Shown: positions 2,396 through 45,885 of the stretch, in pieces
Layout of the letters: each line of letters starts with the position of its first letter
Position numbering within the stretch: position 1 is the first letter of the stretch
DNA from: Macrostomum lignano
Lineage: Eukaryota
Assembly (NCBI GenBank): GCA_002269645.1
Contig: NIVC01001735.1
Location: forward strand, 62,001-126,000
Length of the DNA stretch: 64,000 nt
Direction: 5' to 3'
Notes under the pieces: generated by a model
Told to the model about the DNA's origin: nothing
What the model saw: the letters and a program-made list of their open reading frames with translations, nothing else
Databases searched by the model: none
Translations under genes and position numbers: made by a program

Positions 2396-4776
2396 CTACT
2401 CAATAGCCTCCTCCTCGAAGTCCGGACGCCAGGCCCAGGACACGAGCACCTCTGGCGGCTCGTCGACCCCGGCCCCGAGGCGATGGCGAACGGCCAGCAC
2501 GCGGCCCTCTGGGCGCACCGGGCCGACGCTACTAGAGCTGTCGAAACCTTCTGCCAGTTTGAACACCTTGGCCAGCCAACGTCGACGACGTCCTTCAACA
2601 CCGTCCGGGCCGCCGATGGGCTCCCAGGGCAGCGCAAACGGATGTCGGAATCGGTCTCCGCTGTTGAGGAACGGCGCGACAACATCTGCGGCAGACTGGA
2701 CCAGCACGGGCGCCGGCGGCTGCGGTGATGCAGCGACAACAGCCGCCGAGGCCGCCGCTGAGGTCACGGCTTTTCGCCGGAGCTCCGGCCGACGCTTCGG
2801 CGACGGACGAACGCCGGCCTGATCCTGTCTGGAGGAGCTCAGCACCGATGTCGATCGACGCGGACGCTTTGCCACTGTCGCCATTTCCGCGCTTGACGTC
2901 GCTGTCAAAGACGCGTCCCGATTGTCGTCTTCTTCATCGTCGGATGTTGCCGACACTGAAGGAGGCGGCGAAGACGGTGGCGGCCGCTTCAGTAGTCGCT
3001 TAGGCCGCTGCTGCGAGGCGGCGCCGCTGTCGTGATCGAGCTCGAGCTGAAAGCCGGCGTTGCTGCTTTTCCTGCTTGGCCGGTCGCGAGGATCCAGAGA
3101 CAGCACCGAGTAGTGACGAGCCTCCGGCCGATCGTCCGGGCAGTCGTGATCTGTCCGAGTGGCATGCCGGGCACTTTGTACATGCAGTCTTCAGACTATA
3201 ACCCACGATAAAGACAAAACACAGACATCACAGATCTCACTTAACATTCCATACCCCACACATAAACATCCCAAACCCCACACCCAAACATCCCAAACCC
3301 CACACCCAAACATCCCAAACCCCACACCCAAACATCCCAAACCCCACACCCAAACATCCCAAACCCCACACCCAAACATCCCAAACCCCACACCCAAACA
3401 TCCCAAACCCCACACCCAAACATCCCAAACCCCACACCCAAACATCCCAAACCCCACACCCAAACATCCTAAACCCCACACCCAAACATCCCAAACCCCA
3501 CACCCAAACATCCCAAACTCACACACTTAAACATCCCAAACCCACGCCTAAACATCCCAGACCCCACACCCAAACATCCTAGACCCCACACCCAAACATC
3601 CTAGACCCCACACCCAAACATCCTAGACCCCACACCCAAACATCCTAGACCCACACCCAGATCCCATACCAGAGCATTCCAAATCCCACACGCAAACATC
3701 GCAGATCTCAACCAAGAAACATCAGTTCATATTTAGGTACCATAGAACAGGCTCAGTTAATCACTGCTCCCAAATCAAACGAAAAATATCCTACCTAGAG
3801 CATCATCATGCACAGGAAACTTCTTGTTGCACACTCCGCACACGCGAATGTTTACGTTGTGCTTCGAGCGCAAATGTACCTGCATATTGCGCAGATAGCC
3901 AACGCAAGTGCCGCAGTGGGCGCATTCGAATACGCCTGGCGTGTGTCTCGCTTGATGCAGCCGAAGCCTGTAGGCTGTGCTAAATCTTATTGAGCACACT
4001 GAACATGTGTGGAGCTCTGCCTCGGTGGAGCCCGATAAACAGGAGGCGGATAATGAAGCGGCAGCGCCATTGGATTCATTCGTGGCGCCAATTACTTTGT
4101 TATTCGCGCCATTTACTTCATTAGTCGCGCTATTTAGTTCATTCGTGGCGCCAATTACATCATTATTGGCGCCATTCAATTTATTAGTCGCGCCATTTGA
4201 CTTATTAGTGGCGCCAATTACTTCGCTAGTCGTGCCATTTACTTCATTAGTCGCGCTATTTAGTTCATTAGTGACGCCATTTAATTCACTTGTCGAGCCA
4301 TTCGATTTATTAGTGGCGCTATCTGCTTCATTTGATTCATTAGTGGCGCCAATAGCTTCATTAGTGGCGCCATTTGATTCTTTAGTGGCGCCATTTACTT
4401 TAGTACTGGCGCCATTTGCTTCATTAGTGGCACCAGTAGACTGAGTAGTGGCGCAAATAGATTCAGTTTTGGTGGCAGTTAATAAGGCAGAATTCGAGGG
4501 TGACCTAGTGAATTCAGAATTTTTGTTGGCTAGCATCTTAAATAAATTGTTGCAGTGCCTACTCTGCTTGTTGATGTCCAGGTGCTGCTGGTCGGGATTT
4601 TTCTGCCCAATATCAGACTCAGAAGTATCGATTTTCTTCTCAAGCCAAGTCGAAATGGCTTCCATATTCTCTGAAGACTCAACGTCCACTGATTCCTTAT
4701 TGGCTGAGGCAGTTTGACAAGTGTCAGTACGCTGCGACATTGAGAAGCTTGTGGCCTTGGAGCGATGCCTTGTCAT
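2396..4776 (-). CDS. C2H2 zinc-finger protein: exon 4776-3795 (heptad-repeat region plus 3 fingers) and a probable last exon ~3150-2396 (low-complexity basic/acidic region, possible chromo-like C-terminus)
   Basis: CSVC..HQARH, CAHC..HLRSKH and CGVC.. fingers; phase-1 donor CTAG|gtagga at 3795. The GC-rich ORF 2396-3106 is in the matching frame. The acceptor choice is uncertain (3195 or 3150). Confidence 0.7.
3255..3660. repeat. 22-bp minisatellite (ccccacacccaaacatcccaaa)n in the zinc-finger gene intron
   Basis: Direct tandem units, visible as PKHPKPHTQTSQTPHPNIPNPT periodicity. Confidence 0.95.
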
Positions 4777-4962: not shown

Positions 4963-6910
4963 TTGTCTAAATTAGATCTTATATTGTCATGGACTCCAAT
5001 CGTAGTCAAGATCCTAGTCCCACGGCGGGGGGTCCATCAATCCCCCAACCCTCCAAAATGGAGGTTGACTCTGCCGCGAACCCCCCGGAAACCCCCGCAC
5101 CTTGCCCAGGTGGGTCCACCTTCACCCCCGCTGCAGGGGCGTCTCAAAATGATGGCTTCCAAGTCATTACCCATCGCAGGCGCGATGAGAAAACCTCGGC
5201 TGGCCCTGAGCAAAAAATGCAACAGCCAGACGAGCGCACCGACCCCTCGCTGGACCCCAAGAGGCCAAAGGAGGCCAATGCCGGCACGTATGCTAAAGTG
5301 GCGACGGAGCCGAAATTTAAGATCTGCGTACGTGCGGCTAGCAGCACGCTGACCACCGCCCAGATGGAAGCATCAATCGGCGTAATTGATGACTCACCCT
5401 CAAGAAGAACAATTTTGCCACCTACATTGGGGCGTGGAAGATCGTCTTCCATCTGCTGCCCAGGCATCGTCCAGCCAGCAATCAATGCCAAGGTGAGTCC
5501 GCGAGCTCGGATAGCTCTGGGAACGAGTAATGCCATTTGCTACCCCGTGCCAAACTAGGAGCAGGGTGCTGAGCGCGAACCATGCTGGCCACTGGCCAGC
5601 CCAATGATGACACTGCCACCAGCAACCAGATAAATAACCCGCCGCCGGCAAACCAACCAGTTAACCTGCACATTATTCAGATCAACCTGCACCACACTCT
5701 TGCAGCTTCTAGCAACCTTTCAGGCACCTTTGCCAACAAGGAAGTTGACACCTACCTTATTCAGGAACCGTATACCCACAAGGGGAAGCCGACCTGCCTG
5801 CCGCCAGGCTATCAGGTTCTGTACCTCTGCGCGAACGATACTTCTAGGGCTATTGCCCTTGTCAAAAACGACCGCCTGGCAACTATTATGCCAATGTTTT
5901 GCTCAAAAGGCATGTGTACTTTCTCAGTCTTTGACTTGACCTTCGTTTCTGCCTACCTGGATATCCAGGAAGACGTCCCTCCCTCTCCTGCAGAAGCTGG
6001 CGGACTTCTGTAACCTTCAGGGCTGGAGGCTAATTAGCTGCGATGCTAATGCCCATAACACTGCCTGGTCTAGTAGTGATACCAACAGGCGCGGTGACTT
6101 ACTAATTGATTTCATTAACTCCTCGTTATACATATGTACCAGGGGCAGCTAACCTACATTTATTGTTTCTAACCGACATGAGGTTATTGATCTCACTCTT
6201 GCTTCCAACAACGCCTTCAATCAGATCCACAACTGGCTGGTTAAGCATGATATTCCCTCGCTTTCTGACCACTCATACATCCAGTACAGCATCAGCTTCG
6301 TTGGAGCCCGCCATGAGAACCGAGACCGCCTTAATCTGAAAAAGGCCAACTGGACAGGTTTCCGAAGAGACCTGCTAAAACTCCTAACTGAAGCCAATTT
6401 ACTGGACTGCAGCGAGGATCTCCCTGGCATTGAGCATTGGTGCAACTCCTTTGTTGAGATCCTAAACACCACCATACGCATAATGCCCCTAAATTGAATT
6501 ATAGGAAGAAATACTCTCCTTGGTGGAGTCCCAAGCTCACTTGCATGAAAAACACCTGCTGACTGCAATGCCTTGCAAACAGCTCAAATACCCCAGAGGA
6601 TTAGAAGAAATACCACTCTGCTCTGAAGGTGTACAAAAGTACTATCTGAAAGGCTAAGAAGACCACCTGGAAGGCCTACTATGCCAGCCTAGAAGGGCAG
6701 CACCCCATGGCTTGGCTGGTCAGGTCTCTTAGACACACTTGTTCAGCCTCAGTATAATTCCTTTCTATACCTAGATAGTGACTACACTACTAGTGCCGAA
6801 GGTTTGCTAAATCTTCTATTCTCCACCTGTTTTCCATAGGTTGATGACCCAGAGTACATGGTCAAAGACCACAGGCCTAGTGACCGCCTACTTTTCCAGC
6901 AATGTACCAC
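4963..6910 (+). mobile_element. Decayed 5' half of a non-LTR retrotransposon (R1/LOA/I-group-like): ORF1 remnant plus APE endonuclease; RT missing
   Basis: [70 protein letters not shown] and PWWSPKL motifs across frameshifted segments. Confidence 0.88.
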
Positions 6911-6929: not shown

Positions 6930-7850
6930 TAGGATAAACTTATTGCTCTCTGTATCAATCAATGCTTAAATTATCCAATGAAATAATTAAGTGGTGGAAT
7001 TATTAATGGATTAGATACTAGATAGATGAACCAACATGTACTGCTCTCTGCACTGATCAATGCTTAAATTATCCAAAGGAATAATTATAATTAAGTGGTA
7101 GAATTACTGACAGGATAAACCTTTTGCTCTTTGCATTGATTAATTCTTAAATTATCTGACAGAATAAGTTGTAAGTGACTGCAGTGAATAAGTAATTCCC
7201 TTTGCTCTCTGTAGTAATCCATGCTTAATTATATAATATAATAGTGTAATCAGAAAATCTGAGAAAATTTCTTAGAAATTAAGATTCTTTAAAAAAATAG
7301 CATTTTGTAACTTATATATAACTTACACATTTTATTTCCTTAGTAATTCTATTAGTAATTATGTCACATGCTTATTCTGTCGGATAATTGTTCTGTTGTA
7401 CAAATTGATCAGTGCAAAGAGCAGTACATGTATATTTTTATTCAATCAATAATTCATCACTTATTTAGATAATTTGTACAAATTTATCAGTGCAAAAAGC
7501 AATACATGTACATGCTTGGGCGCAACCTAGGGATTCACCCGGCCGTTTCTATTGGCAACACACACATGTAAGTCGCTATTGGACGGAATAGTAGTCACGT
7601 GACTGCTCTCAGCCAATAGCGACTTACATGTGCGTGTTGCCAATAGAAACGGCCGAGCGATTCCCAAGGTTGCGCATGTATGTACATGTATATTTTTATT
7701 CTATCAGTAATTCTGTCAGTAATTCTACCACTTATTCTGTTGGATAATTTGTTCAAATTGATTAATGCAGACAGCAATACATATAGGTTCATTTTACTAG
7801 TAATCTATCAATATAATCCTATCAGTAATTCTGCCACTTATTCCATTGGA
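6930..7850. repeat. Degenerate AT-rich repeat arranged as inverted arrays (tgctctctg..atcaatgcttaaattatcc units facing their reverse complements)
   Basis: Forward units at ~6940, 7040, 7120 and 7200; reverse units at ~7380, 7465 and 7740. Confidence 0.6.
7511..7682. mobile_element. Palindromic MITE, copy 1 (8-bp TSD tacatgta)
   Basis: Near-perfect hairpin with CAT...ATG ends; tacatgta at 7503-7510 and 7683-7690; homologous copies at 41681 and 43624. Confidence 0.9.
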
Positions 7851-12440: not shown

Positions 12441-14161
12441 TGAGGGGTGTCCAAAAAGTAGTGATACTTTTGCTCGTATAGCTTTATTGTATGCTTGAAA
12501 ATCAGCAAGTTTGGTGTTGTTGGAAAGCGGAACATATCAGCTTTAATTTGACTACAAACATTTAACAAAAACACAACCTATAACAAAGTTATGGATAGAA
12601 ACACACAACAAGGTCGACCATAGAGTTACAATGAATTTGTGCATGGTGCAACAGGTCAAGAAGTTGCAACAGTTAATATGCCTCATCATCATCAGGGAGG
12701 GAAGCTTTCTCGACATAATTGCCCATCAATTGCACGCACTTCTCCCAGCGACAAAACAAGCAATCAATCGCATCTGCGTAGATCTGTCGTGGAATCACAT
12801 GCAAAAGTACTCTGCGGACTTCCTGTTCGAGATGATCACGCTTGGCATGGACATGGCCCCTCAGGTGGCGCTTCAATTGAGGGAAAAGGGCAAAATCCGC
12901 AGGTGCCAGATCTGGCGAATATGGCGGATGAGGCAGAAGGTCAAACTTTAGCTTTTTGATGGCCTCCATTTGGCGGGCAGTATGCGGCCGGGCATTGTCA
13001 TGATGCAAGATGACTGGCTTGACTCCTGAGCGCCGCTTGTTTTGGATGTCTGCCTTCAGGCTTGCAAGGAGAGATGAATAACGGTCTGCGTTGATCGTCG
13101 TTGAAGTCAATGGTAATTGGGCCATTAAAGTCAAAGAAAACTGACAGCATGATTTTCTTACAGTGAGTTTCACGGCAAGCCTTGAGTGGTGGGTCGGAAC
13201 CCTTGAGTGCCCACACTTTAGACTCTTGCTTTATTGACGGGTCAAAATGTCTCATTGCCAGTAACAATCAACTGGCGGAACTGATTCCAGCCACCGCGTT
13301 GACTCACCAGATTCAGGTTGCTTTGGCATGTCTGCTGGCACTGCAGTCGCATATCAGCAGTGAGGAGCTTCGGGACCCAGCAGGCGCTCAGCTTAGCGAA
13401 GTTCATGTTGGTCAGGCAGAGATGGACTGTTGATCGTGGGGTGTCGAGTCTGTCAGCAATCTCACAAATTGTCAATCTGCAGTCTTCTTCCAGAAGATCA
13501 AGAATCCGGTCAGCCAAAGCCTTTGAGCTTGGTGCGGATGGCCTTCCTGACCTTGGCAAGTCAGCCAAATTTTTTCTTCCTGACTCAAATTGCTCGACCC
13601 ATCGGTACACCATCATGCGACTTACTGCTTCGGCTCCATGAATGCTGCACAGATGATGGTAAATCTCCTGTCCACTTTTTCCGATACTCCATAGGGTGTG
13701 AATTGCATGTCGCTGTCCTTCCTTTGAGTGCATGTCCATAACTGTCGGCTGAACAAAATCTGGTCTTGAAAAAGCAACCGCTTGAGAAAGAAGAATGAAG
13801 CAAGCTGGCAGTGCAAAGAAGACTTAGCCATAATTTTACCACAGACAAAACAGCACCACTCGAATGCTTATAAAATGCTCGTAACAGAGAATATTGAGCA
13901 CTCGATATTCTCTGGCTGCTGGATATTCTCCGGCTCGTAAAAACTCAGCAAGATTTACCATACAGTTTTTTTGTAAGTCTATGGGCCATCCTTGCTCAAA
14001 TAGACAGTGATAACTTTCTTTAAAAACAACATACGAGATTGATTTTTCAGTCAAATTAAAGCTGATATTTTCCGCTTTCCAACAACACAAAACTTGCTGA
14101 TTTTCAAGCATGCAGTAAAGCTATACGAGCAAAAGTAACACTACTTTTTGGACACCCCTCA
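12441..14161 (-). mobile_element. Mariner-family DNA transposon with ~113-bp TIRs
   Basis: TIRs 12441-12553 and 14049-14161 (tgaggggtgtccaaaaagtag...) differ at about 5 positions; TA at the right end; internal transposase. Confidence 0.95.
12673..13739 (-). pseudogene. Mariner transposase, two frameshifts, first catalytic Asp changed to Asn
   Basis: WVPKLL, IVTGNETF (normally GDETW), LHHDNARPH and YSPDLAPADF spread over three reading frames. Confidence 0.92.
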
Positions 14162-15215: not shown

Positions 15216-18200
15216 ATGGCTACATACCACGATGCCACCAATCTGATTGCACTTTTGCACTCTTCTGATATTCAAACTGTTCGGGAGACTGAATCGTTCT
15301 TGCGGGAGCATCTGCAGATTGGTAATTGTTCCTTTCAATTAACACAATGCTTTAATTTTGTTTATGTGACCTGATTCTTAAGTCACTTACTTGCTAATTA
15401 AAATTGAAGGCAAAGACAGCAGCGGCCTCGTGTGCGCTCTAGTTGACGACTACATTGTAGCTCAGGACGAGTGCACACTGTCCCTGCTAGGATTGGTCGA
15501 AGATCCTCTGGATAAGGTTTGCTGATGTGACTGCTTTCTGTGTTATTTTCAGTATGCTAATGTATGGAAAAGTTATAATCAAAGTTCATAGCTTTGGGTT
15601 AATTATAGTTTTACAGGAGATTGCTTACTGACGAGTAGAGGATTGATTGATTGTTAAGCAAATCTTTTGAAAATCTTGAGACCTTGATTAAGGCAGATGG
15701 AGGCTACTTGGCTTATTTAATTTAGCTGAAGCCTTCAACGTCTCCCAATCCCCGCTGAAGGGACCCAATCTCAAGGTGGCCCAAGCACTGACTCCTGGAG
15801 GACCCATGTCTGTTCCAGTGACATAATCTGACACCCCGTTTAACAGCAATTTCCATCAAGACCTGCTCCCTATCTAACTACTAACATTTCCCTAGGGCTA
15901 CTACTACTACTAAACTACTAATAGTAGCGTAAAAGCAAAAAAACTGCTGTCATCACAATTTCTATAGTTTGCGATTACAATTGGGTTTGTGAGTCTGTAA
16001 GGTTCAAGACCAAATGAGAAAGATTAATAACTCAAAAGCCTTATGAGTAAGTTTAAAAATGAGGTCTTAAGGAATTGCTATTCCTGCTGGTAATTGTGCA
16101 GTTACTGTATTACCAAACACGCATGCCGAAACCTCTACAGGACTTGTCCGACCGCATAGCCGAACACCTGAGAGCGGACTCCTCTCGAGTGCACGCTATG
16201 AACCTCCTTGGCCGACTAGTTCAACGCCAGCCTCTCTGGCTGTCCTCGATCTTCTCTAACGGACTGTTCCAGACTCTGCTTCGATTGCTATTAAAATGCG
16301 ATCCGCCAGCCGATCTGCCGTTTGCTATCAGCGGCGGCCTCCTGCTGTGCACCTTGGTGCCTCTGTCGGCCGGCTGCCTCACGCCGCACCTGTCCGACAT
16401 CTGCAGCCTGCTGGTCCGCATGGCGGCCGCCGCTAGCAGGCGCTCCGTTGATCCGCCACCATCGCCGTCGACTGCAGCGCCGCCAACGTCAGTCGCAGTT
16501 ACCGCGGCTTCAACTGATGATTTGCCGCTGCTGCACCTGCACGCAACCGTGTACGCCCTGTTCAACCGGCTGTACGCCATCTTCCCCAACTACCTGTTGG
16601 ATTACCTGCGCTCCCAGTTGAAACGAAATAGTCGCGAATTCGCTCCGCTATTTAATTCGATATTCCGCGATTTACTGAGCCGAGTCAGAGCTCACCCGCT
16701 GCTGGTGGCCGGCACTAAAGACGCCGAACTGCAGGCGCAGCGCTGGCGTCGGGTGACCTCGGCTGACCTCATGCTGGAGTGCGGCCGCTACTGCCTGGAC
16801 CTGGTCGAGACCACAGCTGGCGAGGCCGGCATTCAACTGGCGGCTACGTGCAGGCAGTTGGAGCAGCAACAGCAGCAGGCGGTTAGCGAGGAGGCTCGCG
16901 ACCTGCTGGCCTCATCTCAGTTGGGGCAAAGCCAGTCGCATCAGCTGCAGACTTCCGGTGCCGATGCCGGAGTGGATTCCAATGCCGCTGCCGCTCCGGC
17001 AACTGCTGCGGCTGATGCTGACGCTCAGGATGAGCTGATGCTGCAACAGGTGAGTGCAATTCTGTAGTTCTCCCACTGGACCCAAGTTTTCCCACTAAGA
17101 TTCTCTTGCCGAGAATTCAGTGCCAGGATTTGGCGATTCGCACAGCGAGGGCTCGGAAATCCAGGTCATACGAGTGTTAGGACGGATGCCCTAAAATCTA
17201 TTTAAAAAATTGTAGCCACTGCACTGCTACACACTTTAGGCATGTGCATGTACATCACATTGTGTCGCCTCAGAAGCGTCTGGGAGTGGTTTCAGAGTCG
17301 TAGGCAATAAAACACCTCAAATTGACTCTTAGGCGACTCTTCGACGACTTTTTGGCGACTCGTACCGTGACATCTCGTCATTTTAGAGTCGTGTAGAGTT
17401 GCTTCGGTCCTATTTTACCTGTGTTACCTTCAACGACTCTGAAACCACTTTGGGGCGACGCAAGTGACTTCGGGACGCTTCTTACCTTTTTATCATATAG
17501 GGAAAAATAGAAAGGCGCAGTGAATTTAGGGGCGCTAAAAAATCCCCATAAATCGTAGCAACAAGTATTGTTACGGAAATCAAGGAAATCCCCAAAATCC
17601 CGCCTATAAATCAGGGAAATCCCAAATATCCCGCCTATAAATCAGGGAAATCCAAAATATACCGCCTATAAATCAGGGAAATCCCAAATATCCCGCCTAT
17701 AAATCAGGGAAATCCCAAATATCCCGCCTATAAATCAGGGAAATCCTAAATATACCGACTATAAATCAGGGAAATCCCCAATATACCGCCTTTAAATCAG
17801 GGAAATCCCAAATATCCCGCCTATAAATCAGGGAAATCCCAAATATCCCGCCTATAAATCAGGGAAATCCCAAATAAACCGCCTATAAATCAGGGAAATC
17901 CCAAATATACCGCCTATAAATCAGGGAAATCCCAAATATCCCGCCTATAAATCAGGGAAATCCCAAATATCCCGCCTAAAAATCAGGGAATTCCCAAATA
18001 TCCCGCCTAAAAATCCCGATAAATCAAGGAAATCCCCAATATCCCGCCTACAAATCCCTAAAATCAAGAAAGCCCTCATTATGTCGCTCGTGCCCCATCT
18101 CCCACACTGCTCAGGTGCTCCCAGAGGACGGCACATTTCCATCCAAGGAGTCGTTCCTGTGCTCCAGTCTGGTCCGCCGGGTGCGCACCCGCCTGTACAC

Positions 18201-20982
18201 GCACCAGCCAGGCTCCGCCGATCCCTACTCAGCTGAGCTGGCTGTGTCTCCCATTGTGTCAGCTTCCGCCTCGTCAGCTGGCGGCCAACTCTGGCTTCGT
18301 CAGTTGCAGCAGCAGCAGCAGTCGCTGGCGCATCGGCATCGAAAGCTGCCGCTGCCAGGCCAAAGGAGGCGCTCCTTGAGCTCTCCCGCTCTGCTAGACG
18401 TGGAGCTGGCATCGCAGGAGCAGCAAAATCATCATCAGCAGCAGCAGCAGCGGCAGATTCGATTTAGTGGTAAAGAGAACAAAAAAGCAGCTGCTGACGT
18501 GGACGATGGGAGAGCGCAGCCTTCTAATAAATCCAATGAAAGCGACAGAGCAACGGAGCAGGTGCAGAACTTTTTTTGCAGGATATTTTTTAAACACAGC
18601 GAATTCCTTTCTCAGCCTCTGGCTAATCTCCTCAAGGATCTGTATAAAAAATCTCACTGAGAATCTCCACCCACCAATACCCCGAATCTCACGCACCAAT
18701 ACCCAGATAATCTCACCCAACCTGCACCCAGAGAATCTCACCCAGCCAGCACCCAGAGAATCTCACCCAGCCAGCACCCAGAGAATCTCACCCAGCCAGC
18801 ACCCAGAGAATCTCACCCAACCAGCACCCAGAGAATCTCACCCAACCCGCACCCAGAGAATCTCACCCAGCCAGCACCCAGAGAATCTCACCCAGCCAGG
18901 ACCCAGAGAATCTCACCCAACCAGCACCCAGAGAATCTCACCCAGCCAGCACCCAGAGAATCTCACCCAGCCAGCACCCAGAGAATCTCACCCAACCAGC
19001 ACCCAGAGAATCTCACCCAACCAGCACCCAGAGAATCTCACCCAACCCGCACCCAGAGAATCTCACCCAACCAGCACCCAGAGAATCTCACCCAACCTGC
19101 GCCCAAGTCAGCACAGCCAGGTCTTGGACACAGCTCACTCAGCTGCCCCATCCAAATTCAGTCAACAGACTGCGGCGCCAGCAGCAACGGCCTGCAGCTC
19201 CGGCCGCCCCCAGCGGTGCTCAGCCGGGACAGCCAGTCGTACGCCGAGCTGTTCCTGTCCGCCCTGCCCATGTTCCCCTTGGCCAAGTGTCCGGAGTGCG
19301 GCCACGTGTCCGCCGGGCCGCACTTGTACTGCCAGCCGGCGGCCGCCTGCAGTCAGCCGCTGCCGCAGTGCCTCAGCCTGGCTCCAGCCGATCTCCTTGA
19401 CGCCGCCGTCATCTGCTCGGCCGAGCTGCATCAATTATTTCTTGAGCAGCGGCAGATAAAGCAGAATACTGGTAAAGCCGCTGAGCCAAGCAACTTGGAG
19501 CAGCAACTGCGCGCCCAGCTGCTGCAATCCCGCTGTCTGCTGATGTACGAGCGCCACCGCCGGGAGCTGCACGCCCAGCGGAACCGCCGCCTCCTGGCCC
19601 GCCTGGTCCGGCTGCGCAGTCTGGAGGCCGAAGCCGAGGACGCCAGGCGTCTCGGCAGGTCGAAAATTCTTCAACGAGTCGACGAACTTGAGAGCTGCCT
19701 GTTGAACGAGCGCGCCGAGTGGCAGCGGGAGCGAGCCGAACTGCTCGAACAGGCCGAGTCCGCCCGCCGACTCGCCGACGAACGGGCGCGAGAAGCGGCG
19801 GCCTCAAAGGACAAGGCCCGCTCGGCTGCCGACCTCTGCCAGGACCTGCGCCGCCTGCTTGAGGAAGAGCGGAATCAGCGGATGCGAGCTCAGGCCCGGC
19901 TGGAGAATGCGGAGTTGGAACTGCTGGCCTGCAAGTCTGATGGAGAGGTTCGGCCCTTTGCTATTGGCTATCACCTGCGATTGCCCCCTTCACCAACCCT
20001 GATTGCCCCCTTCACCAACCCCGATTGCCCCCTTCACCAACCCCGATTGCCGCCTTCACCAACCCCGATTGCCCCCTTCACCAACCCTGATTGCCCCCTT
20101 CACCAACCCTGATTGCCCCCTTCACCAACCCCGATTGCCCCCTTCACCAACCCCAATTGCCCCCTTCACCAACCCCGATTGCCCCCTTCACCAACCCCGA
20201 TTGCCCCCTTCACCAACCATAATTGCCCCAATCACCAACCCCAATTGCCCCAATCACCAACCCCAATTATCCCAATCAACAACCTCAATCACCAACCCCA
20301 ATTGTCCCCTTCACCAACCCCAATTGCCCCAATCACCAACCCCAATTATCCCAATCACCAACCTCAATCACCAACCCAATTGCCCCAATCACCAACCCCA
20401 ATTATCCCAATCACCAACCTCAATCACCAACCCCAATTGTCCCCTTCACCAATCTCAATCACCAACCCCAATCGCCTACCCGTCACCCAACTAATCTCCA
20501 TCACCCGGATCTGCCGCCACTCACAGACGGCCCAGGCCGCCGGCCGCCAGCTGCAGGAGGCGCAGCGCAGGCTGCTTGTCCTCGGCGACCTCCTCGCCAA
20601 GTCGGAGACCAGCCTGCGTCAGCGAGATGCCCAACTTGACGAGCTTCGATTTCTTCGCTTGCACGCCGAACGACTTGAAAAGCGTTCAATTACTATGGAA
20701 ACGGAGCTAGATCAGCTTCATCAATTATTAGGCTCCAATCCTAGGTCACCGGACCCGCAGCGTCTTGTCGACGACAGTTTAACGCAGCAGGCAGCAATCG
20801 CGACCGCCGACGCTACAGAGGAGTTGGCTCAGCTGAGGCGGGAGAACGCCGAGCTGAAGCGGAGGCTGGCCCAGCGGGACCTTGACGCCGACTTGCTGGC
20901 GGTCAGTCGCATCGCCGGGCCGGCCGCCTCTGACTGCAGCTGCTGCCCCTTGGTGCGCATGACCAACTCGCTGACTGGCTAG
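15216..20982 (+). CDS. TSC1: Hamartin (TSC1); exons 15216-15321, 15410-15516, 16141-17049, 18115-18561, 19162-19947, 20527-20982
   Basis: LHLHATVYALFNRLYAIFP, VRAHPLLVAGTKDAEL..RWRR and LLMYERHRRELHAQRNRRLL match hamartin. All junctions are GT-AG and phase-consistent. The exon 4 donor and the 3' end are less certain. Confidence 0.93.
17590..18060. repeat. 31-bp minisatellite (aaatcagggaaatcccaaatatcccgcctat)n in TSC1 intron 3
   Basis: About 13 tandem units. Confidence 0.95.
18655..19100. repeat. 25-bp minisatellite (ccagcacccagagaatctcacccaR)n in TSC1 intron 4
   Basis: Tandem units seen directly. Confidence 0.95.
19975..20500. repeat. 22-bp minisatellite (cccgattgcccccttcaccaac)n, decaying rightwards, in TSC1 intron 5
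   Basis: Tandem units seen directly. Confidence 0.92.
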
Positions 20983-22152: not shown

Positions 22153-22224
22153 GGCCAAGTGGTCTAGGGGTATGATTCTCGCTTCGGGTGCGAGAGGTCC
22201 CGGGTTCGAATCCCGGCTTGGCCC
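22153..22224 (+). tRNA. tRNA-Pro(CGG): tRNA-Pro, anticodon CGG
   Basis: Acceptor stem GGCCAAG/CTTGGCC; anticodon arm CTCGC-TTCGGGT-GCGAG; T arm CCGGG-TTCGAAT-CCCGG; body matches eukaryotic tRNA-Pro. Confidence 0.97.
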
Positions 22225-27530: not shown

Positions 27531-28066
27531 CTGAAACGCTGCATTTGATGCAAAAAACCAAGTCAGTCCCGAAGCTCCGCTTCCCCAATCCGCACAGTCT
27601 GCAAAGTTGAAAGAAAAGTCAGTGGGGGAACGAAGCATTCCTGCATGGTCCAGGCGGCCGAATTCCCTTCCACTGCAAAGCGAAGGAAGAACCCCAGCCG
27701 AGGATGCTGGAAACTGGTCCCCCAACCTCCTCCTCTCAATCCCGAACTTGCACACTAGCCTGTACAGCTTGCACAGTCTGCTGTACGCTTGGCACTCGAA
27801 TCGCAAAACTGGAGGAGGGTGGCGATGCTTCCTGTGACTGCAACAGGCTGCACGCAAACTGGCCCTGCTGAATGGCTCTACTGACATGTTTAGGAATGTA
27901 GCCATCTGATCTGAAACCGTTTCGTATTTGTTGACGCGAGGGTTTAAGAGAGAGAGAGAGAGTGTGCGAACAGAAATGCCCGAGATTTGTGGTTCGACAT
28001 TTTGAGCCTGCAAGCCACAGCCTTCCAGAGACTACAAGTGAGCCAGCAGTTTAAAATCTGTAAAAT

Positions 28067-28890
28067 CTATAGATTAGCAATCCATTCTATTCCTGTAAGC
28101 ACAGGCTATAGATTAGCAATCCATTCTATTCCTGTAAGCACAGGCTATAGATTAAAAATCCATTCTATTCCTGTAAGCACAGGCTATAGATTAGCAATCC
28201 ATTCTATTCCTGTAAGCACAGGCTATAGATTAGTAATCCATTCTATTCCTGTAAGCACAGGCTATAGATTAGTAATCCATTCTATTCCTGTAAGCACAGG
28301 CTATAGATTAGTAATCCATTCTATTCCTGTAAGCGCAGGCTATAGATTAGTAATCCATTCTATTCCTGTAAGCACAGGCTATAGATTAGTAATCCATTCT
28401 ATTCCTGTAAGCGCAGGCTATAGATTAGCAATCCATTCTATTCCTGTAAGCACAGGCTATAGATTAGTAATCCATTCTATTCCTGTAAGCGCAGGCTATA
28501 GATTAGCAATCCATTCTATTCCTGTAAGCACAGGCTATAGACTAGTAATCCATTCTATTCCTGTAAGCGCAGGCTATAGATTAGTAATCCATTCTATTCC
28601 TGTAAGCGCAGGCTATAGATTAGTAATCCATTTTATTCCTGTAAGCGCAGGCTATGGATTAGCAATCCATACTATTCCTGTAAGCACAGGCTATAGATTA
28701 GCAATCCATACTATTCCTGTAAGCACAGGCTATAGATTAGTAATCCATTTTATTCCTGTAAGCGCAGGCTATAGATTAGTAATCCATTCTATTCCTGTAA
28801 GCACAGGCTATGGATTAGCAATCCATACTATTCCTGTAAGCACAGGCTATAGATTAGTAATCCATTCTATTCCTGTAAGCGCAGGCTATA
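28067..28890. repeat. 39-bp minisatellite (ggctatagattagtaatccattctattcctgtaagcaca)n
   Basis: About 21 units. Confidence 0.96.
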
Positions 28891-30915: not shown

Positions 30916-31113
30916 ATTATATCTATAATAAGTTAGTCTACCTCCCAAACAACGCTAAACTCGCTGATTTTCGCCTTCGCCTTGTCACGTCTTTGACGAC
31001 TTTGCGAGTGGCTGTTGTGGCTTTTAGCCAAGCATGATAAGCCTGGATAGGCCATAGTGATGCATAGCATATCAGCCAAATTAGGAATAAGGAGAATATG
31101 CAGCAGATAGATA

Positions 31114-37760: not shown

Positions 37761-37944
37761 TATTTATCCATTAAATACGCGGCTGAAAGATAAAGATTGA
37801 GGCACGTTTGTGGCACATATCAACATATTTTTAATATGGTAGGCTCGCAAAATGCACGGTAAATGTATTAAAATTTGATATTGGTATTGATATATAAGTT
37901 GAAAACGATTACATGCATTTAAATAGATACGACATATTCATCCT

Positions 37945-38900: not shown

Positions 38901-41680
38901 GGCCCGTCCCTGCATGCTGTCCGTCAGAGGCTGAAGCTGTCGGCTGTAAATCTGCTTAATTGGAGCGGGTGTAATCAATTAATAATAATATAATATTATC
39001 ATTATTATTACCTCACTGCATTTGTAATGCATTTTTGCAGGCGCCACTAAAATGCAGCATCTGTCTAAAATGATTCAGTTTATTCAGCTGTCATGTCAGC
39101 TGGAAGATTGACAGCCAGCTAAGTTGCCACCTATAAGTTTGCCAAGCTTGCCAAGGTTGTCCTGTAGTCGAAGTTTGCCAGCTTAAGGCAGTCAGAAAGA
39201 GGCGGCTAGATCTAGTGTAAAAATATGTTTCATTGTTAATTATTTTAGCGTTGGTTTTCATGCCATTAAAACAGTATAAATTGATTTCCATGCAGAGCCA
39301 GTTGAATACCATACCAAATTCATAAAATTTATGCTTTAATCAATTGAAGTGGTGACAAAATTGAGCAAAAAATACTATGTTTCATCCTAGAAGTGACAAT
39401 CATACAAAAAATTCAAAATTCTATTCTAAATTACATTAAAGTATAATTAATGTTGTTTTGTTTTGTTGTGTTATTTTTACTTAAAAGTTGTATACATTTC
39501 TCACTTTTCAACATTTTGAAAATGTTTATTTAATTTTGAAATATAGTTAAAGACAATGGTGGTAGGAATATTTAAACATGGTAAAAATTGTTTTTAGTTG
39601 CACATTTCGAGATTCATAGTTTTCCTTTCCATGCTATTCAGTCAAAGGGATATTTGATTTTGTGAATGTTTTATGATATAGAATTACAATATATACAAGC
39701 TACCAGAAAAATTATGCCATATGCCTACTAAATATCTATAAGAATTTTGAAAAGCATATATTCCAGACATCATGCATTGGAGTTACAATCAGAATTCAGT
39801 TTTTATTTCATTCATTACAACCTTTAAATGTATTGAAACATTAATTATTGAATTTATTGACTATGTTATAGACATAGTCAAAGATGATTGGAAGTATAAT
39901 ATCTAGATAGACTATAGTGATTAAAATCAGGCTAGTTTAACTTGATTTTGATAGTATGCAACACTTTTTTGGTGCATGAATGGTAATATATTTTTATTTA
40001 TAATGTCATGAAATACTCATATATACATATAACTACTAGTAATAGTATGCAAAAAGGGGCAACACAAAATTCATTCAATTAATAAATAAACAGTATTTAG
40101 GACTCTAATTTAAATTGTAGAAGTCTTAATAGATATAGGCATATAGCTTATAAATTATAATACAATAAAACTTTTTTGAAGCACAACTAAGCAATATTCC
40201 CAATAAGTTTTCAGAATAATGTCAATTTTTAGCCAAATATATAGTAGGCATCTGTTAAATTTAGTGTTAATATCTATTCTCTAACCAATAAAATCTATAA
40301 TTGACAAACTAGGCCTAATATAGCAATTTATCTTTTTTTACCTTTATATACACTTTTAAATACTTTTATATATGCATTATAGCTTAACTATAAGATATAT
40401 AGTGCATTTTTAAGTAAAAATACTTTAGATGCACATTTCTAGTACTTCTAAGGGTTGAATGAGAACAAATTGATAAATTGACTTTAATCAAGCTGAAGAA
40501 AAATAAGGAGATGCTTTGTATACTTGAATTATTCTTAAGAATTGTTTTGAAGCCCAGTTGTATGTTTTTCCAATCGAATAAATATACAATATACACTATA
40601 ATAATTAATAAACACGCAAAAGGATACAATGCAACCTAGTTACATGGATTAATCAAGAATCATATGAATTCTTGAATATGGTATAAAAAGGACAACAGCT
40701 CCCTGGTAACGTGTCGACTGAGGTCTCTACTGGACATTTTTCGCTTTGGACCGATTTTGTCACGAAGCGAAAACTTAAATTGGTGCTTCATTTGTGTCCG
40801 CGACCGCGGGTAGAATGCGCGTAAAACAACACGATCTTTACGCGCGTAAAATTGTGCGTTTGAATACGCGATGTTTACGCCAAGGACTTCTAGACTAGCA
40901 GGACGTAAAACTCAAAGATCGTGTAAATTTTTAGGAGGACGATTTCCTGGAAAAAATACACTGCGGAGATAGGAGCAAATCATTTTTTCATCACAAAATC
41001 AATGATTGCATTTGATCTAAGGCAGCTAAGATAACCATTCTTTTTATTTAGCACGCACAACATGTTACTCTATTATATTTTAATGTAGTTGTGTCTTGAA
41101 AGTTTCATCTTCATATTATTTTCTTTTTATTTCATAAGCCCCAAGTTGCAAAATACTCACAAGTGGCATTAGCCGAACTTTGTATTTTTCCTTTTTAAAA
41201 TCAAGTATATTTGCAATAAAAATGCTGCATTACGGTACTATTAAGCCATTATTGTAGGTATAATTCCATTTCAATGTAGTAACTATACTAATAGACCTGT
41301 CTATGTAGTTAAATATATAAGGACAATATTTACAATATGCCCCCACCATTTTCATTTTTCTTGTTTTACCTAGGCCTCAAGTCTTTAGAAAGCTATCAGT
41401 TTTTACCTGAAAGCCAGACAGAAAAAAATGGTTAGGGCCTAGGCCTAGTCACAAAAATGGGCACTAACCTTTTTTCTAGGTTTTTACACTTTTAATTAGG
41501 CTTAGATTTTTAATTTTTTATTGCAAATTTGAATACACTATACTATATAAACTAGGCCTAGCACCCAGCTGGTTTAGGTTTACCTTCCTTGAATTATATA
41601 TTTTGTTGAATATAATACCTTTAAAATTGCAATTTTAGTTTGTAATGGTATATTTCATATCATATTTGAATCATAGGCCT

Positions 41681-41859
41681 CATACATGCGCAACCTTGGG
41701 AATCATTCGGCCATTTCTATTGGCAACACAGAACACACACATGTAAGTTGCTATTGGATGGAATAGTAGTCACGTGATTGCTCTCAGCCAATAGCAACTT
41801 ATATATGTGTGTTGCCAATAGAAATGGCCGGGTGAATCCCTAGGTTGCACCCAAGCATG
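41681..41859. mobile_element. Palindromic MITE, copy 2 (8-bp TSD ataggcct), core inverted relative to the ends
   Basis: Homologous to 7511-7682; ataggcct at 41673-41680 and 41860-41867. Confidence 0.9.
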
Positions 41860-43623
41860 ATAGGCCTAATTATTAGATTATTATGATAGGTCTTTTATTA
41901 TAAACTAAAAAATGGGTAATACAATACTGCATGCCCACATTTATCTTAACTTTAGCATTTATTTACTATTGAAACTAGGCCTAGGCCTTATTGCACTCAT
42001 AAAGCTTTGAAACTAGGAATATTTAGGCCTATTCATTTTACTACCTTATATCTATTTATAAAACTAAGCTGGCTCTAATAATTGACAATGAAAATCTAGT
42101 TTTTAGTATTAATTTAAAATTTGTTTATTAATTTAGTTATCTATATTCAGTTTTAATTTTATTTTTTATAGGTAAATATGATTTTTTAATTAGTATTATT
42201 TAATAACTTAGATTTTGGCTATTAGGGTCTAATCCAAATACTAAATAGTACTTAGATGTCTAATTGTTACATTTTTATTCAATAATCTTTAATTTTACTA
42301 TAAGTATTTTGTACCAATATATTATCCTATCATCTATCTTAATAGATAGATAGTTATCATGCCAATTAAATTTTTGGTAGTAACTTACACTAGCAACCAT
42401 TTTAGACAAAAGGCTGCAAAATCTAATCTTGTTAGATTTCAAACAGATTTCCTTATGATATAAATTATGTCTAGCATTGTATTTGACATACTTAATCCTT
42501 TGATCTTTCCAGTGCCTATCTGACTTCAGTGGAAATTTTTGCAAAGCATCAACCTGCTAAAATGCCATTGCACAAGATGATATACTTTTGGATACCAATT
42601 AAAGTGATCCACAAAGTGTCTTTCCTGACACCACAAGGTCTTCATTACATTTGACTTTAGCAAGTGAGTAAATTTTCTAAATGTTGTTTTTTTAATATAT
42701 GGATAAGGGTTAGTAAAAAGCAAGGGTCAATGTGGTTGGGGCAAAAGATGATATATCCTTACCTTTTACATGGCTAGTTTCCCTAAATTTATGATGGCAT
42801 AGTTTGTAGCAAAATTTATGGTATAACCTTTTAGGAAAGTTCATTCCAATGAAAAGACAAAATTTCTCATTTTACCATTGCCCATACCTACCAACATTTT
42901 AGTGTGGTGGATGGACTCCAGCACTAGGCCTATTGCTCATCATTGCAGCACTCAAGTCAAAGTTTTGCATTTTTGGGCTTCCAACATCAACTAGAGCGAT
43001 AGTCTCAATTGGAGGCCATGGAAAGCAATCTCAAGCATGCTGGTAGAGCCTGGTGCCAACCTTGGAAAGAATTTGGAGCCCACCTGATTGTTAATCATTT
43101 TTCATCTGGCAGCTGCAACTGAGCATTGGAAATGGAATTCACTATATCTATAACTGGCCAGCGGGAACTGCACACTGAGAAGCAATGCCCATGTCCTTCA
43201 CCCCACATAACATTGAGGTCTCACTTTAGTGGTCTTAGCGATGTAGGATGCGATCTTCATAGACATGCCATTGAACCTGATCTGCTATGCCACATCTCAA
43301 GAAAGCTGACTAATGTTTTAAGGGTATAGTGCGGCAAGACTGAGTCTGATAGATAGTCCAATTTCAGCCACTGTAGGCCGACTGTGCAAAATTAATTGAA
43401 GCAAATAAGCTTCATGGTACTTGCTAATTTGCCAATTTTTTCTCTTTTTAAATACTGATATCTGCTTTTCTGTTTAGTTTAGCTACAAGTTGCGCAGCCA
43501 TTGGAGCTAAGGCCGCCCACGCATTGCCTGGATGTAGTGCTCCTCACTAACCCCGTGCATAAAACTCCACATGGCCATGACAATCCAACTGCACTGTTAG
43601 TTCCACAAAAAAATTCTATGCCG

Positions 43624-43793
43624 CATACATGCGCAACCTGGGGAATCACTCGGCCGTTTCTATTGGCAACACACATGTAAGTCGCTATTGGCTGAGAATA
43701 GTCACGTGACTACTATTCCATCCAATAGCAACTTACATGTGTGTGTTGCCAATAGAAACGGCCGGGTGAATCCCTAGGTTGCGCCCAGGCATG
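43624..43793. mobile_element. Palindromic MITE, copy 3 (TSD ctatgccg/ctatgcct)
   Basis: Whole-element reverse complement of copy 1; 7 of 8 TSD bases match. Confidence 0.9.
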
Positions 43794-45734
43794 CTATGCC
43801 TGGTAAACACTTAACACTACACTGCTGGTTATTATACTCATATTTCGACCTCCAAATTAAGCCAAGCCTTTACAGTATTTAAATTTACTTTTCTGATTTA
43901 CTTTTGATTTACTTCATAGATACAAGTACCATGTCATACAAAATATTTACTCAATTTTGCCCTTGCAGTTGCATATTATGAGCTGTGCATCTTTGTGCCT
44001 GGTTTATTTTTCCATTTCTGAAACATCAAACATTGCAAAAAACCAATTCAAAAACAAAGAACATTTTCTATTTTCTACATCAGTATGTATAAAGAATGTA
44101 TCTATACATTGCTCTTTTAATGTTTCAATGCACTGTATATATATTATAAATTACATCTTACATTCTTTGCAAGTCAAAACAGTTGAAAGTTCACATTTCA
44201 GATCTGTGAAACAAAATAAAATTCATTTGAAATGAAAAAAAGTCTTGTCTTTTTTATTTACTAAGGTGAAAGAGAAGTTATTAACTTTGAGTTATTTATA
44301 AGAAAGACATCACCAGCAAAAATTAAGGTAGTGCCAATGAGTCTTGAAGTGCTAGTGTCAGCCAGCAAGCAGTTAAAGAACTGCAGTTGCTCATCTTGAA
44401 TGCAGTGCACAGTAGAATAGCCTCAAAGCTTGATGTTGTCTGGTTACTAGAGCACAGCAATCTTCTGTATGTTGACAACCAAACCAATTGCCAGCACAAA
44501 ACCAACCAGCCTGCCTAGCTTTTTGGGTGGCAGGCTAGGTCACTGAGTTGTGACAAGTGAGCAGGACATGGAATGCCATAATGCAATCATTAGGTTGATC
44601 AAACATGAAGCATTCGCCAATACACAGCTAGTAGATAAGCTCAGAATGTAGGCTGAAAATCAGGCAGTGGCAATTGAGGCTTGTTGCTGGCAGCTGAAAC
44701 AAAATATGTTGAAATATAAAGAATTTAATTGTTCAGGGTTAGTGCAAAAATAAATATTATCAAAGGTTGTCAATTGTATTTTAATATATAAGTCAACATA
44801 AAAAAAAAGCTAATACATAAGCAAAAGGTACAAAAATTCAATTAGAAGTTTTACTACTATATGATGTAAATTTTTAGCTAAAAAAGTAATTTAAACTTAA
44901 AATAGTACACATATAAAACTATTTTAACAAATTCCTTTTTCTTAAACTATTATTTAACATTTACCTTTTCTAACAACTAATCTATTTATTTTGTTAATTA
45001 TTAATGCAAATATATTTCTTATTAACACATTTTAACCTATAAAACTTGCAATTTAATAATAATAATAATAATAATATTAAAAGTTACATACTAAAAAAAT
45101 CTAGAATATTTCTTATAGATAGGCCTACTTAGTAAAAATGGTTAGAGCTTGTTTTTGTGCCTAGGTCTATATGACTATATTCTTGGTCCTATATATGCAG
45201 GTCTAGCTTAAAAAACTGATAGCTTTCTAAAGACTTGAGGCCTAGGTAAAACAAGAAAAATGAAAATGGTGGGGGCATATTGTAAATATTGTCCTTATAT
45301 ATTTAACTACATAGACAGGTCTATTAGTATAGTTACTACATTGAAATGGAATTATACCTACAATAATGGCTTAATAGTACCGTAATGCAGCATTTTTATT
45401 GCAAATATACTTGATTTTAAAAAGGAAAAATACAAAGTTCGGCTAATGCCACTTGTGAGTATTTTGCAACTTGGGGCTTATGAAATAAAAAGAAAATAAT
45501 ATGAAGATGAAACTTTCAAGACACAACTACATTAAAATATAATAGAGTAACATGTTGTGCGTGCTAAATAAAAAGAATGGTTATCTTAGCTGCCTTAGAT
45601 CAAATGCAATCATTGATTTTGTGATGAAAAAATGATTTGCTCCTATCTCCGCAGTGTATTTTTTCCAGGAAATCGTCCTCCTAAAAATTTACACGATCTT
45701 TGAGTTTTACGTCCTGCTAGTCTAGAAGTCCTTG

Positions 45735-45885
45735 GTTTACGCGTGTAAAACTAGTGTACAAATTAGGCGCGTCGATATATGCAGCAGTTACACGCGTAAT
45801 ACGCGTGTATTCGCAGTGTAAAATTTACGCGCGTCGCTTACGCAGTAATTACACGCGTAATACGCGCTGCGTCAGAGACTGGGAT
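45735..45885. mobile_element. Right part of an ACGCGT-rich element split by the long-TIR element (left part ~40790-40880)
   Basis: CGCG-rich sequence on both sides of the TSD; ends cagagactgggat, like the 37543 copy. Confidence 0.55.

What the first reader, a model, noticed from the sequence alone, without database searches (positions are those of the whole stretch)
7511..7682. Hairpin MITE exists as flip/flop isomers: the core is inverted relative to the asymmetric ends
Seen: the element has two distinguishable ends (A: catgcttgggcgcaacctagggattcacc; B: catacatgcgcaaccttgggaat) and an asymmetric core (ggaatagtagtcacgtgac..ctctcagc). In copies 1 (7511) and 3 (43624) the ggaatagta side adjoins end A. 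In copy 2 (41681) it adjoins end B. All three have 8-bp TSDs (copy 3 with one mismatch), so each is a whole insertion. Known: flip/flop isomers mark hairpin-transfer replication (parvovirus ITRs) and recombination between inverted arms. Inference: this family passes through a hairpin/cruciform or template-switch step that inverts its core, which is not expected from plain cut-and-paste.
Basis: partly seen in the sequence, partly recalled or inferred. Interest (0 to 1): 0.8.

Follow-up and report, generated by a model that had tools for sequence, protein, structure and literature searches.

The report
Palindromic flatworm MITE with flipped core
A 170-180 bp hairpin-shaped mobile element of the flatworm Macrostomum lignano occurs three times here, and one copy has its 30-base centre exactly reverse-complemented relative to its two unlike ends; this is most simply an ordinary inversion between the element's own inverted arms, not yet evidence for a new way of transposing.

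Summary
The window (Macrostomum lignano, GCA_002269645.1, contig NIVC01001735.1) has exactly three copies of a 170-179 bp near-palindromic element. Each has 8-bp target-site duplications (8/8, 8/8, 7/8) and two distinguishable ends, A and B. With A on the left, copies 1 and 3 carry the 30-nt core in one orientation. Copy 2 carries its precise reverse complement: 28/30 identity to copy 1 when flipped, 21/32 otherwise, with no junction indels.

An exchange between the 42-bp perfect arms is the only simple way to make such a flip. But spacer inversion between inverted repeats, by template switching or intramolecular recombination, is a known general mutation process (plastid hairpin "flip-flop" inversions, short template switches). 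One event in the ancestry of copy 2, the most decayed copy, is enough.

Nothing shows that the flip is part of the transposition cycle. The 8-bp TSDs point to ordinary DDE cut-and-paste.

I could not enlarge the sample. There are no further copies in 109 kb of other M. lignano DNA, and none in the DNA or protein collections. The flop fraction therefore stays at 1/3 (95% CI 0.8-91%). A genome-wide census would be decisive and is easy outside this toolset.

The parts
7511..7682 (+). MITE copy 1 (172 bp), 'flip' isomer. End A is at the left on the + strand. TSD TACATGTA lies at 7503-7510 and 7683-7690.
   Evidence: The ssDNA hairpin folds at -71.3 kcal/mol, z -17.3.
7583..7612 (+). Core of copy 1: ACGGAATAGTAGTCACGTGACTGCTCTCAG. 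It is the 12-bp palindrome AGTCACGTGACT inside a 10 x 8 nt asymmetric bubble.
7425..7432 (+). Paralogous empty site for copy 1. The neighbouring unit of a degenerate ~100-bp tandem repeat has a single TACATGTA followed by TATTTTTATT, as at the filled site.
   Evidence: read directly from the sequence
41681..41859 (-). MITE copy 2 (179 bp), 'flop' isomer. End A is at the left on the - strand. TSD ATAGGCCT lies at 41673-41680 and 41860-41867. It is the most decayed copy, with 8 private transitions and a 7-nt insertion in one arm.
   Evidence: Fold -55.9 kcal/mol, z -11.4.
41758..41787 (-). Core of copy 2. It is the exact reverse complement of the c1/c3 core relative to ends A and B: 28/30 to c1 when flipped, with no junction indels.
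43624..43793 (-). MITE copy 3 (170 bp), 'flip' isomer. End A is at the left on the - strand. TSD is CTATGCCG at 43616-43623 and CTATGCCT at 43794-43801 (7/8).
   Evidence: Fold -72.0 kcal/mol, z -16.5.
43692..43721 (-). Core of copy 3. It has the same orientation as c1 relative to the ends (27/30). A GC>AT double substitution extends pairing with the opposite side of the bubble.
40880..45735 (.). Context only: a 4,856-bp non-coding DNA element that carries copies 2 and 3 inside it. It has 525-bp terminal inverted repeats that are 100% identical (40880-41404 and 45211-45735) and a TTTACG duplication on both sides.

Best explanation
This is a family of miniature, non-coding DNA transposons (MITEs) in the Macrostomum lignano genome. 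Each copy is a 170-180 bp quasi-palindrome and makes 8-bp target-site duplications. It was presumably moved in trans by a DDE transposase that tells the two unlike ends apart (inferred).

The 30-nt centre lies between two ~42-bp arms that are perfect inverted repeats. In the lineage of copy 2 that centre was reverse-complemented by an exchange between the arms. The exchange could have been replication template switching across the hairpin or cruciform, or an intramolecular crossover between the arms.

This is the generic 'inverted-repeat spacer inversion' mutation. It happened once or occasionally, in a master copy or in situ. It is not an obligatory step of transposition.

Shown: the copies, the TSDs, the unlike ends, the precise flip and the strong hairpin potential.
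Inferred: the arm-to-arm exchange, its incidental nature and the transposase class.
For: - There are three copies with exact boundaries and 8-bp TSDs.
- A neighbouring tandem-repeat unit supplies an empty site for c1.
- No ORF or Pfam content fits in 170 bp, and there is no Rfam match.
- All three copies fold as long hairpins, z -11 to -17.
- The c2 core equals the reverse complement of the c1 core at 28/30, against 21/32 unflipped.
- After flipping the core back, c2 aligns with c1 and c3 with no junction indels. The breakpoints therefore lie inside the identical arms.
- Ends A and B stay linked to their own subterminal bubble in all copies. Only the segment inside the long perfect arms moved.
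- The flop copy is the most diverged copy, so one old event is enough.
- Template switching between inverted-repeat arms is reported to cause arm homogenisation and spacer inversion (PMC8604942, abstract seen).
- Hairpin-bounded small inversions in plastomes flip back and forth 5-7 times within a single tribe (PMC6824564).
- In c3 a GC>AT double substitution raises complementarity with the opposite bubble side from 4/7 to 6/7. Templated mutation in a hairpin leaves that kind of footprint. This is suggestive only.
Against: - With three copies, 'incidental' cannot be told from 'systematic'. One flop in three is somewhat unexpected if flop is below 1% of the family (P = 0.03 of seeing both isomers).
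- No pre-inversion state of c2 is available. The two homeologous contigs lack the whole ~8.4-kb segment that carries c2 and c3.
- Transposase class and autonomous partner are unknown.
- The extreme termini share only CAT...ATG, which is unusual for a classical TIR element.
Confidence: 0.6

Rival explanations
1. The flip is coupled to mobility. One route is a single-stranded or cruciform hairpin that is nicked in one arm and copied back (parvovirus-like hairpin transfer). The other is repair of the gap left by excision, in which synthesis-dependent strand annealing can re-anneal through the palindromic arms in either register. Either way every transposition or excision-repair cycle would randomise the core orientation.
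For: Both isomers turn up in a sample of only three. This has probability 0.75 if the ratio is 1:1, but 0.27 at 10% flop and 0.03 at 1%. The hairpin potential is very strong. The flip is precise.
Against: - 8-bp TSDs on all three copies indicate staggered-cut integration of a double-stranded element.
- The outer asymmetric patches (termini and subterminal bubble) are conserved and never homogenised between arms. This argues against one arm being copied from the other.
- The two similar copies share an isomer and the diverged copy has the other.
- No HUH/Rep-type nickase or transposase gene lies near the copies.
Confidence: 0.2
2. The flip came from ectopic gene conversion between different copies. 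Because the arms are palindromic, any copy can pair with any other in two registers. A conversion tract spanning the core, copied from a donor aligned in the flipped register, would install the reverse-complement core without any intramolecular inversion.
For: The arms are near-identical between copies. The flip is exact, with unchanged arms. Copies 2 and 3 lie only 1.8 kb apart.
Against: The c2 core carries its own private transition (GACT>GATT). It is not identical to the flipped core of either neighbour, so no donor is identified. A conversion would be expected to erase some of c2's private arm substitutions near the core, yet c2 keeps private changes 15-20 nt from the core. In outcome this rival cannot be told from the best explanation.
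Confidence: 0.15
3. Copy 2 is an assembly or consensus artefact of a long-read assembly at a palindromic sequence.
For: Palindromes are difficult for consensus callers. The surrounding 4.9-kb element has suspiciously perfect 525-bp inverted repeats.
Against: - The 525-bp repeats are flanked by a TTTACG duplication and enclose 3.8 kb of unique sequence, so they are the ends of a real element.
- c2 has perfect TSDs and an exact 30-nt reversal with intact arms.
- c2 has private substitutions on both sides of the core.
- A consensus error would not produce a clean reverse complement.
Confidence: 0.03

Closest known systems
Hairpin-associated small inversions ('flip-flop' mutations) of plastid non-coding DNA
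   Same: A short spacer (here 30 nt) bounded by perfect inverted-repeat stems is found in both orientations, with the stems unchanged. The event is attributed to exchange in the stem of a hairpin. In plastomes it recurs many times within a clade (PMC6824564).
   Different: Those cases are single orthologous loci in an organelle genome, compared between species. Here the two states are seen in different paralogous insertions of a nuclear mobile element. Recurrence has not been shown.
Short-range replication template switching between inverted-repeat arms (quasi-palindrome mutagenesis; template-switch mutations)
   Same: It predicts exactly the two footprints seen. One is precise spacer inversion (c2). 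The other is clustered substitutions that increase arm complementarity (c3 GC>AT). See PMC8604942 and PMC5453318.
   Different: It has been documented at ordinary genomic inverted repeats and RNA hairpins, not as a property of a MITE family. I cannot tell a template switch from a reciprocal crossover between the arms.
Parvovirus ITR / poxvirus telomere flip-flop isomers
   Same: Two forms of an imperfect hairpin that are reverse complements of one another.
   Different: Those arise at molecular ends, at every replication round, through a site-specific nick and hairpin transfer or concatemer resolution. They give about 1:1 mixtures (established knowledge). Here the hairpin is internal to a chromosomal insertion with TSDs, no nickase is known, and the ratio is unknown.
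Classical eukaryotic MITEs of 8-bp-TSD superfamilies (hAT-like, P-like)
   Same: Small size, no coding capacity, TSD of fixed length, inverted-repeat structure, multiple dispersed copies.
   Different: Almost the whole element is one hairpin. The terminal 7-9 nt of the two ends are not complementary beyond CAT/ATG. The hAT terminal consensus YARNG (from memory) is not matched by CATGC or CATAC. The superfamily is unassigned.

Membership tests
MITE (non-autonomous class II transposon) | Target-site duplication of constant length flanking each copy | tested here: met
   8 bp in all three copies: 8/8, 8/8 and 7/8 identical.
MITE (non-autonomous class II transposon) | Terminal or subterminal inverted repeats | tested here: met
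   Long inverted arms start 8-10 nt from each end. The extreme termini share only CAT...ATG.
MITE (non-autonomous class II transposon) | Small size, no coding capacity | tested here: met
   170-179 bp. All frames are interrupted or shorter than 60 aa. A protein search with the longest frame found nothing.
MITE (non-autonomous class II transposon) | Multiple dispersed copies, and an empty site lacking the element | tested here: met
   Three copies lie in different contexts. A paralogous empty site for c1 is present in the adjacent tandem-repeat unit. No orthologous empty site could be obtained for c2 or c3.
MITE (non-autonomous class II transposon) | An autonomous partner with the same ends encoding a transposase | not testable with these tools
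   No eukaryotic genome DNA search is available. The end motif occurs only in the three copies across the 173 kb held.
hAT superfamily | 8-bp TSD | tested here: met
hAT superfamily | Terminal consensus YARNG (from memory) | tested here: not met
   The ends read CATGC and CATAC.
Parvovirus-type hairpin-transfer flip/flop | Both isomers present in roughly equal amounts | tested here: inconclusive
   2 flip to 1 flop; 95% CI for flop 0.8-91%.
Parvovirus-type hairpin-transfer flip/flop | Site-specific nickase (HUH/Rep) and a nick site in one arm | not tested
   No such gene was seen among window ORFs. The breakpoint cannot be mapped because the arms are identical.
Parvovirus-type hairpin-transfer flip/flop | Both isomers at one and the same locus or molecule population | not testable with these tools
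   There is no read data. The homeologous contigs lack the c2 locus.
Inverted-repeat spacer inversion (template switch or intramolecular recombination) | Inverted segment exactly bounded by inverted repeats, with arms unchanged and no junction indels | tested here: met
   The 30-nt core lies between ~42-bp perfect arms and realigns cleanly after flipping back.
Inverted-repeat spacer inversion (template switch or intramolecular recombination) | Recurrence or homoplasy of the flip across lineages | not testable with these tools
   Only three copies are available.
ssDNA hairpin transposons (IS200/IS605-type, PATEs) | No target-site duplication; insertion next to a specific short motif | tested here: not met
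   8-bp TSDs are present and the target sequences differ between copies.

The most novel reading that the evidence does not exclude
Core orientation is randomised at each mobilisation. This would happen because the element passes through a hairpin or cruciform intermediate, or through excision-gap repair that can anneal through its palindromic arms in either register. Young copies would then be about 1:1 flip to flop. It would be the first eukaryotic TSD-forming transposon family with parvovirus-like isomerism, and it would give a sequence-readable record of a hairpin step in transposition or repair.
Probability: 0.1. Interest if true: 0.75.

Novelty: new member of a known kind. Interest (0 to 1): 0.3.

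Why it matters
If the flip is only an occasional inverted-repeat spacer inversion, the finding is a tidy nuclear example of a known mutation class, in an undescribed MITE family of a model flatworm. Its practical lesson is that repeat annotators and phylogenies of palindromic MITEs should allow for core inversion. Otherwise one flip is miscounted as ten or so substitutions.

If a census showed about 1:1 isomers in young copies, the family would become a natural reporter for hairpin or cruciform processing during transposition or double-strand-break repair in an animal germ line. That would be of real interest to transposon and replication biologists.

Tried and rejected
1. More copies by DNA. 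I scanned viral contigs, genome contigs and metagenome contigs with arm motifs conserved in all six arms. Only single chance matches came back, or none.

2. More copies by protein. The longest MITE reading frame shares no words with any database protein.

3. More M. lignano DNA.
- Fetching the LicD gene's homeologs and paralogs (L014-L018, 109 kb) gave no copy, by blastn and by an nhmmer profile.
- Ten window ORFs were not in the protein collection.
- Close relatives (79-93% identity) of the window's retroelement-like ORF at 5582-6013: the ten checked are UniRef-only M. lignano proteins with no contigs on record. Two further ones are not on record.
- One weaker hit is a 1-kb Logan contig whose source organism I did not determine.

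4. Orthologous empty or filled sites for c2 and c3. Both homeologous contigs lack window ~37536-45942 altogether.

5. Arm-to-arm gene conversion inferred from mirrored variants in c2. I rejected this as evidence. Both mirrored pairs are CpG sites. c2 has lost 7 of the 12 CpG columns in the alignment, and all 8 of its private substitutions are transitions. Independent decay therefore explains the symmetry.

6. The idea that c2 and c3 are duplicates of one insertion (their TSDs match at 6/8). Rejected: the flanks beyond the TSD are unrelated.

7. Structured-RNA gene. No Rfam family matches at any copy.

8. Literature. No paper links MITEs with flip-flop cores, and no description of M. lignano MITEs was found.

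Full report
**What is there.** The window comes from Macrostomum lignano. A single-exon LicD-family gene at window 31425-32480 is identical to a protein on contig NIVC01001735.1 (182,887 bp) of GCA_002269645.1. Its closest relatives are M. lignano proteins. The window corresponds to about 62,001-126,000 of that contig.

Three motif searches were run, each allowing mismatches. They used an 18-mer from the arms, a 17-mer from the ends and a 13-mer from the core. Each finds exactly the same three elements. Each gives 6 matches, two per element because the element is palindromic. Shuffles predict 0.05, 0.31 and 0.91 matches. An nhmmer profile built from the three copies finds nothing else in the window.

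**Boundaries.** The copies are c1 7511-7682 (172 bp), c2 41681-41859 (179 bp) and c3 43624-43793 (170 bp). Their flanking 8-bp duplications are TACATGTA/TACATGTA, ATAGGCCT/ATAGGCCT and CTATGCCG/CTATGCCT.

c1 sits in a degenerate ~100-bp tandem repeat. The preceding unit has a single TACATGTA (7425-7432) followed by the same TATTTTTATT, so it serves as an empty site.

**Anatomy.** Each strand folds into one long hairpin. Free energies are -71.3, -55.9 and -72.0 kcal/mol, against about -21 for shuffles, with z of -17, -11 and -16. The element is a quasi-palindrome with three asymmetric patches:

- **The termini.** The extreme ends read CATGCTTGG (A) and CATACAT (B). They are complementary only in CAT/ATG.
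- **The subterminal bubble.** This reads TAGGGATTCACC (A) against TTGGGAATCGCT (B).
- **The core.** These are the 30 nt between the innermost CTATTGG and CCAATAG. The core is a perfect 12-bp palindrome, AGTCACGTGACT, flanked by a 10 x 8 nt mismatch bubble (ACGGAATAGT opposite GCTCTCAG).

About 42 bp of perfectly complementary arm lie between the subterminal bubble and the core.

**The flip.** When all copies are oriented with end A on the left, c1 and c3 have the GGAATAGTA side of the core next to A. c2 has it next to B. The numbers are:

| Comparison | Same orientation | One core reverse-complemented |
|---|---|---|
| c1 vs c3 | 27/30 | 22/32 |
| c2 vs c1 | 21/32 | 28/30 |
| c2 vs c3 | 21/32 | 27/30 |

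. If the c2 core is flipped back in silico, c2 aligns with the others end to end, with no indel at either junction. In all three copies the two outer patches stay linked to one another. The segment that changed orientation is exactly what lies inside the long perfect arms.

**How the flip most likely arose.** The reversed segment is bounded by identical inverted repeats and the junctions are seamless. The only simple route is therefore an exchange between the two arms. This could be an intramolecular crossover, or a replication template switch across the hairpin.

This is a known, general mutation class.

- Template switching between inverted-repeat arms is described as causing both arm homogenisation and spacer inversion (PMC8604942, abstract; see also PMC5453318).
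[quoted passage not shown] They flip repeatedly, 5-7 changes per site within one tribe (PMC6824564).

c3 shows a possible second footprint of the same process. An adjacent GC>AT double change on one side of the bubble raises complementarity to the other side from 4/7 to 6/7, and it alters the predicted fold. This is a single case and could be chance.

**Is the flip part of the transposition mechanism?** Nothing here says so. Four points bear on it.

- The 8-bp duplications indicate staggered-cut integration of duplex DNA. This is typical of DDE transposases and is an inference from established knowledge.
- The outer asymmetric patches are conserved and are not homogenised between arms. This argues against one arm being routinely copied from the other.
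- The flop copy is the oldest-looking copy. It has eight private substitutions, all transitions and five of them at CpG. It also has a 7-nt insertion. Its non-core identity to the others is 133/149 and 131/149, against 136/142 for c1 with c3.
- c2 has mirrored variants in its two arms, which might suggest arm-to-arm conversion. Both are at CpG sites. Because c2 has lost 7 of the alignment's 12 CpG columns, the symmetry can be coincidental. I do not count it as evidence.

On the other side, finding both isomers among only three copies is mildly unexpected if flop were very rare. The probability is 0.03 at 1% flop, 0.27 at 10% and 0.75 at 50%. The exact 95% interval for the flop fraction is 0.8-91%. 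The data exclude almost nothing.

**Attempts to enlarge the sample.** None succeeded.

- No tool here searches eukaryotic genome DNA.
- Scans of the viral, prokaryotic and metagenome collections with arm motifs gave only chance single hits, or none.
- A protein search with the longest MITE frame found nothing.
- I fetched 109 kb of other M. lignano sequence: two homeologous loci and three paralogous loci of the LicD gene. It holds no copy.
- Relatives of the window's retroelement-like ORF at 5582-6013 gave no usable M. lignano DNA. The close ones that I checked are UniRef-only or not on record, and one weaker hit is a 1-kb Logan contig of undetermined origin.
- The two homeologous contigs lack window ~37536-45942 entirely. 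No orthologous filled or empty site for c2 or c3 exists in the data I could reach.

**Context of c2 and c3, and the misassembly question.** Both copies lie inside a 4,856-bp AT-rich, non-coding element (40880-45735). That element has 525-bp terminal inverted repeats that are 100% identical, and TTTACG on both flanks.

The perfect repeats might look like an assembly palindrome. Three things argue that this is a real, recently inserted long-TIR element: the flanking duplication, the abrupt repeat ends and the 3.8 kb of unique sequence between the repeats. c2 and c3 were then either passengers or later insertions. c2 itself has clean TSDs and private changes on both sides of the core. I give an artefact about 3%. 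Only reads can close this.

**Comparison with known systems.** By TSDs, inverted repeats, size, copy number and empty site, the element qualifies as a MITE. The superfamily is unassigned. An 8-bp TSD fits hAT- or P-like elements, but the termini do not match the hAT consensus I recall, and no partner could be searched for.

The flip works like an inverted-repeat spacer inversion. It resembles parvovirus flip/flop only in outcome. The defining features of hairpin transfer could not be shown: a site-specific nick, a dedicated nickase, equimolar isomers, and both forms at one locus.

I found no paper that describes flip/flop cores in MITEs, or that describes this family. That absence is weak evidence, because the library is partial.

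**Verdict.** An arm-to-arm exchange did occur, but it is most economically an occasional mutation of a palindromic repeat and not a signature of an unusual transposition pathway. Interest is modest (0.3). A genome-wide census of end-versus-core orientation is cheap and would decide the matter.

Noticed in passing
window 40880-45735: A 4,856-bp non-coding, AT-rich element with 525-bp terminal inverted repeats that are 100% identical, and a TTTACG duplication on both flanks. It carries MITE copies 2 and 3 internally. It looks like a very recent insertion of a long-TIR non-autonomous DNA transposon.
   Followed up: partly
window ~37536-45942: This ~8.4-kb segment is absent from both homeologous contigs (NIVC01000677.1 and NIVC01002720.1), which are otherwise 94-98% collinear. 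It holds an LTR-retroelement RNase H fragment at 38310-38738 and the long-TIR element. Weak 61-nt inverted repeats lie at its edges (37543-37603 and 45825-45885, 70%).
   Followed up: partly
window 41681-41859 (copy 2): All 8 private substitutions of copy 2 are transitions, 5 of them at CpG, and 7 of the alignment's 12 CpG columns are lost in c2. This hints at deamination-type decay of this repeat in M. lignano (methylation or editing?).
   Followed up: no
window 43692-43721 (copy 3 core): An adjacent GC>AT double substitution makes one side of the core bubble more complementary to the other (4/7 to 6/7). This is the pattern expected from a templated quasi-palindrome mutation.
   Followed up: partly
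window 41673-41680 and 43616-43623: The TSDs of copies 2 and 3 (ATAGGCCT and CTATGCCK) agree at 6 of 8 positions although the wider flanks are unrelated. The c1 TSD, TACATGTA, is a perfect palindrome. This may reflect a target preference.
   Followed up: no
window 7583-7612 and equivalents: Each copy carries a central CACGTG (E-box) palindrome and four CCAAT/ATTGG motifs in the arms. The element could therefore spread promoter-like motifs.
   Followed up: no
window 12673-13739 (-): A degenerate mariner/Mos1-type transposase split into two ORFs, with HTH_48 and DDE_3 domains. The best database relatives are only 65% identical, so this mariner lineage is poorly represented.
   Followed up: partly
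window 4989-6013 (+): A truncated retroelement-like pair of ORFs with no Pfam match. The second ORF has 79-93% identical stretches embedded in many chimeric M. lignano gene models in UniRef (BTB, SWIM, kinase and other domains).
   Followed up: partly
window 22153-22224 (+): A tRNA gene (Rfam RF00005, 57 bits), lying downstream of the hamartin exons seen at 16075-17067.
   Followed up: no
window 3159-3530, 19900-20700, 28000-30950, 34660-35750, 36560-36960, 57400-59840: Very many long minisatellite arrays lie in and between genes (hamartin, LicD, PiT phosphate transporter, Orai, a penta-EF-hand gene). Array lengths differ between the homeologous contigs.
   Followed up: no
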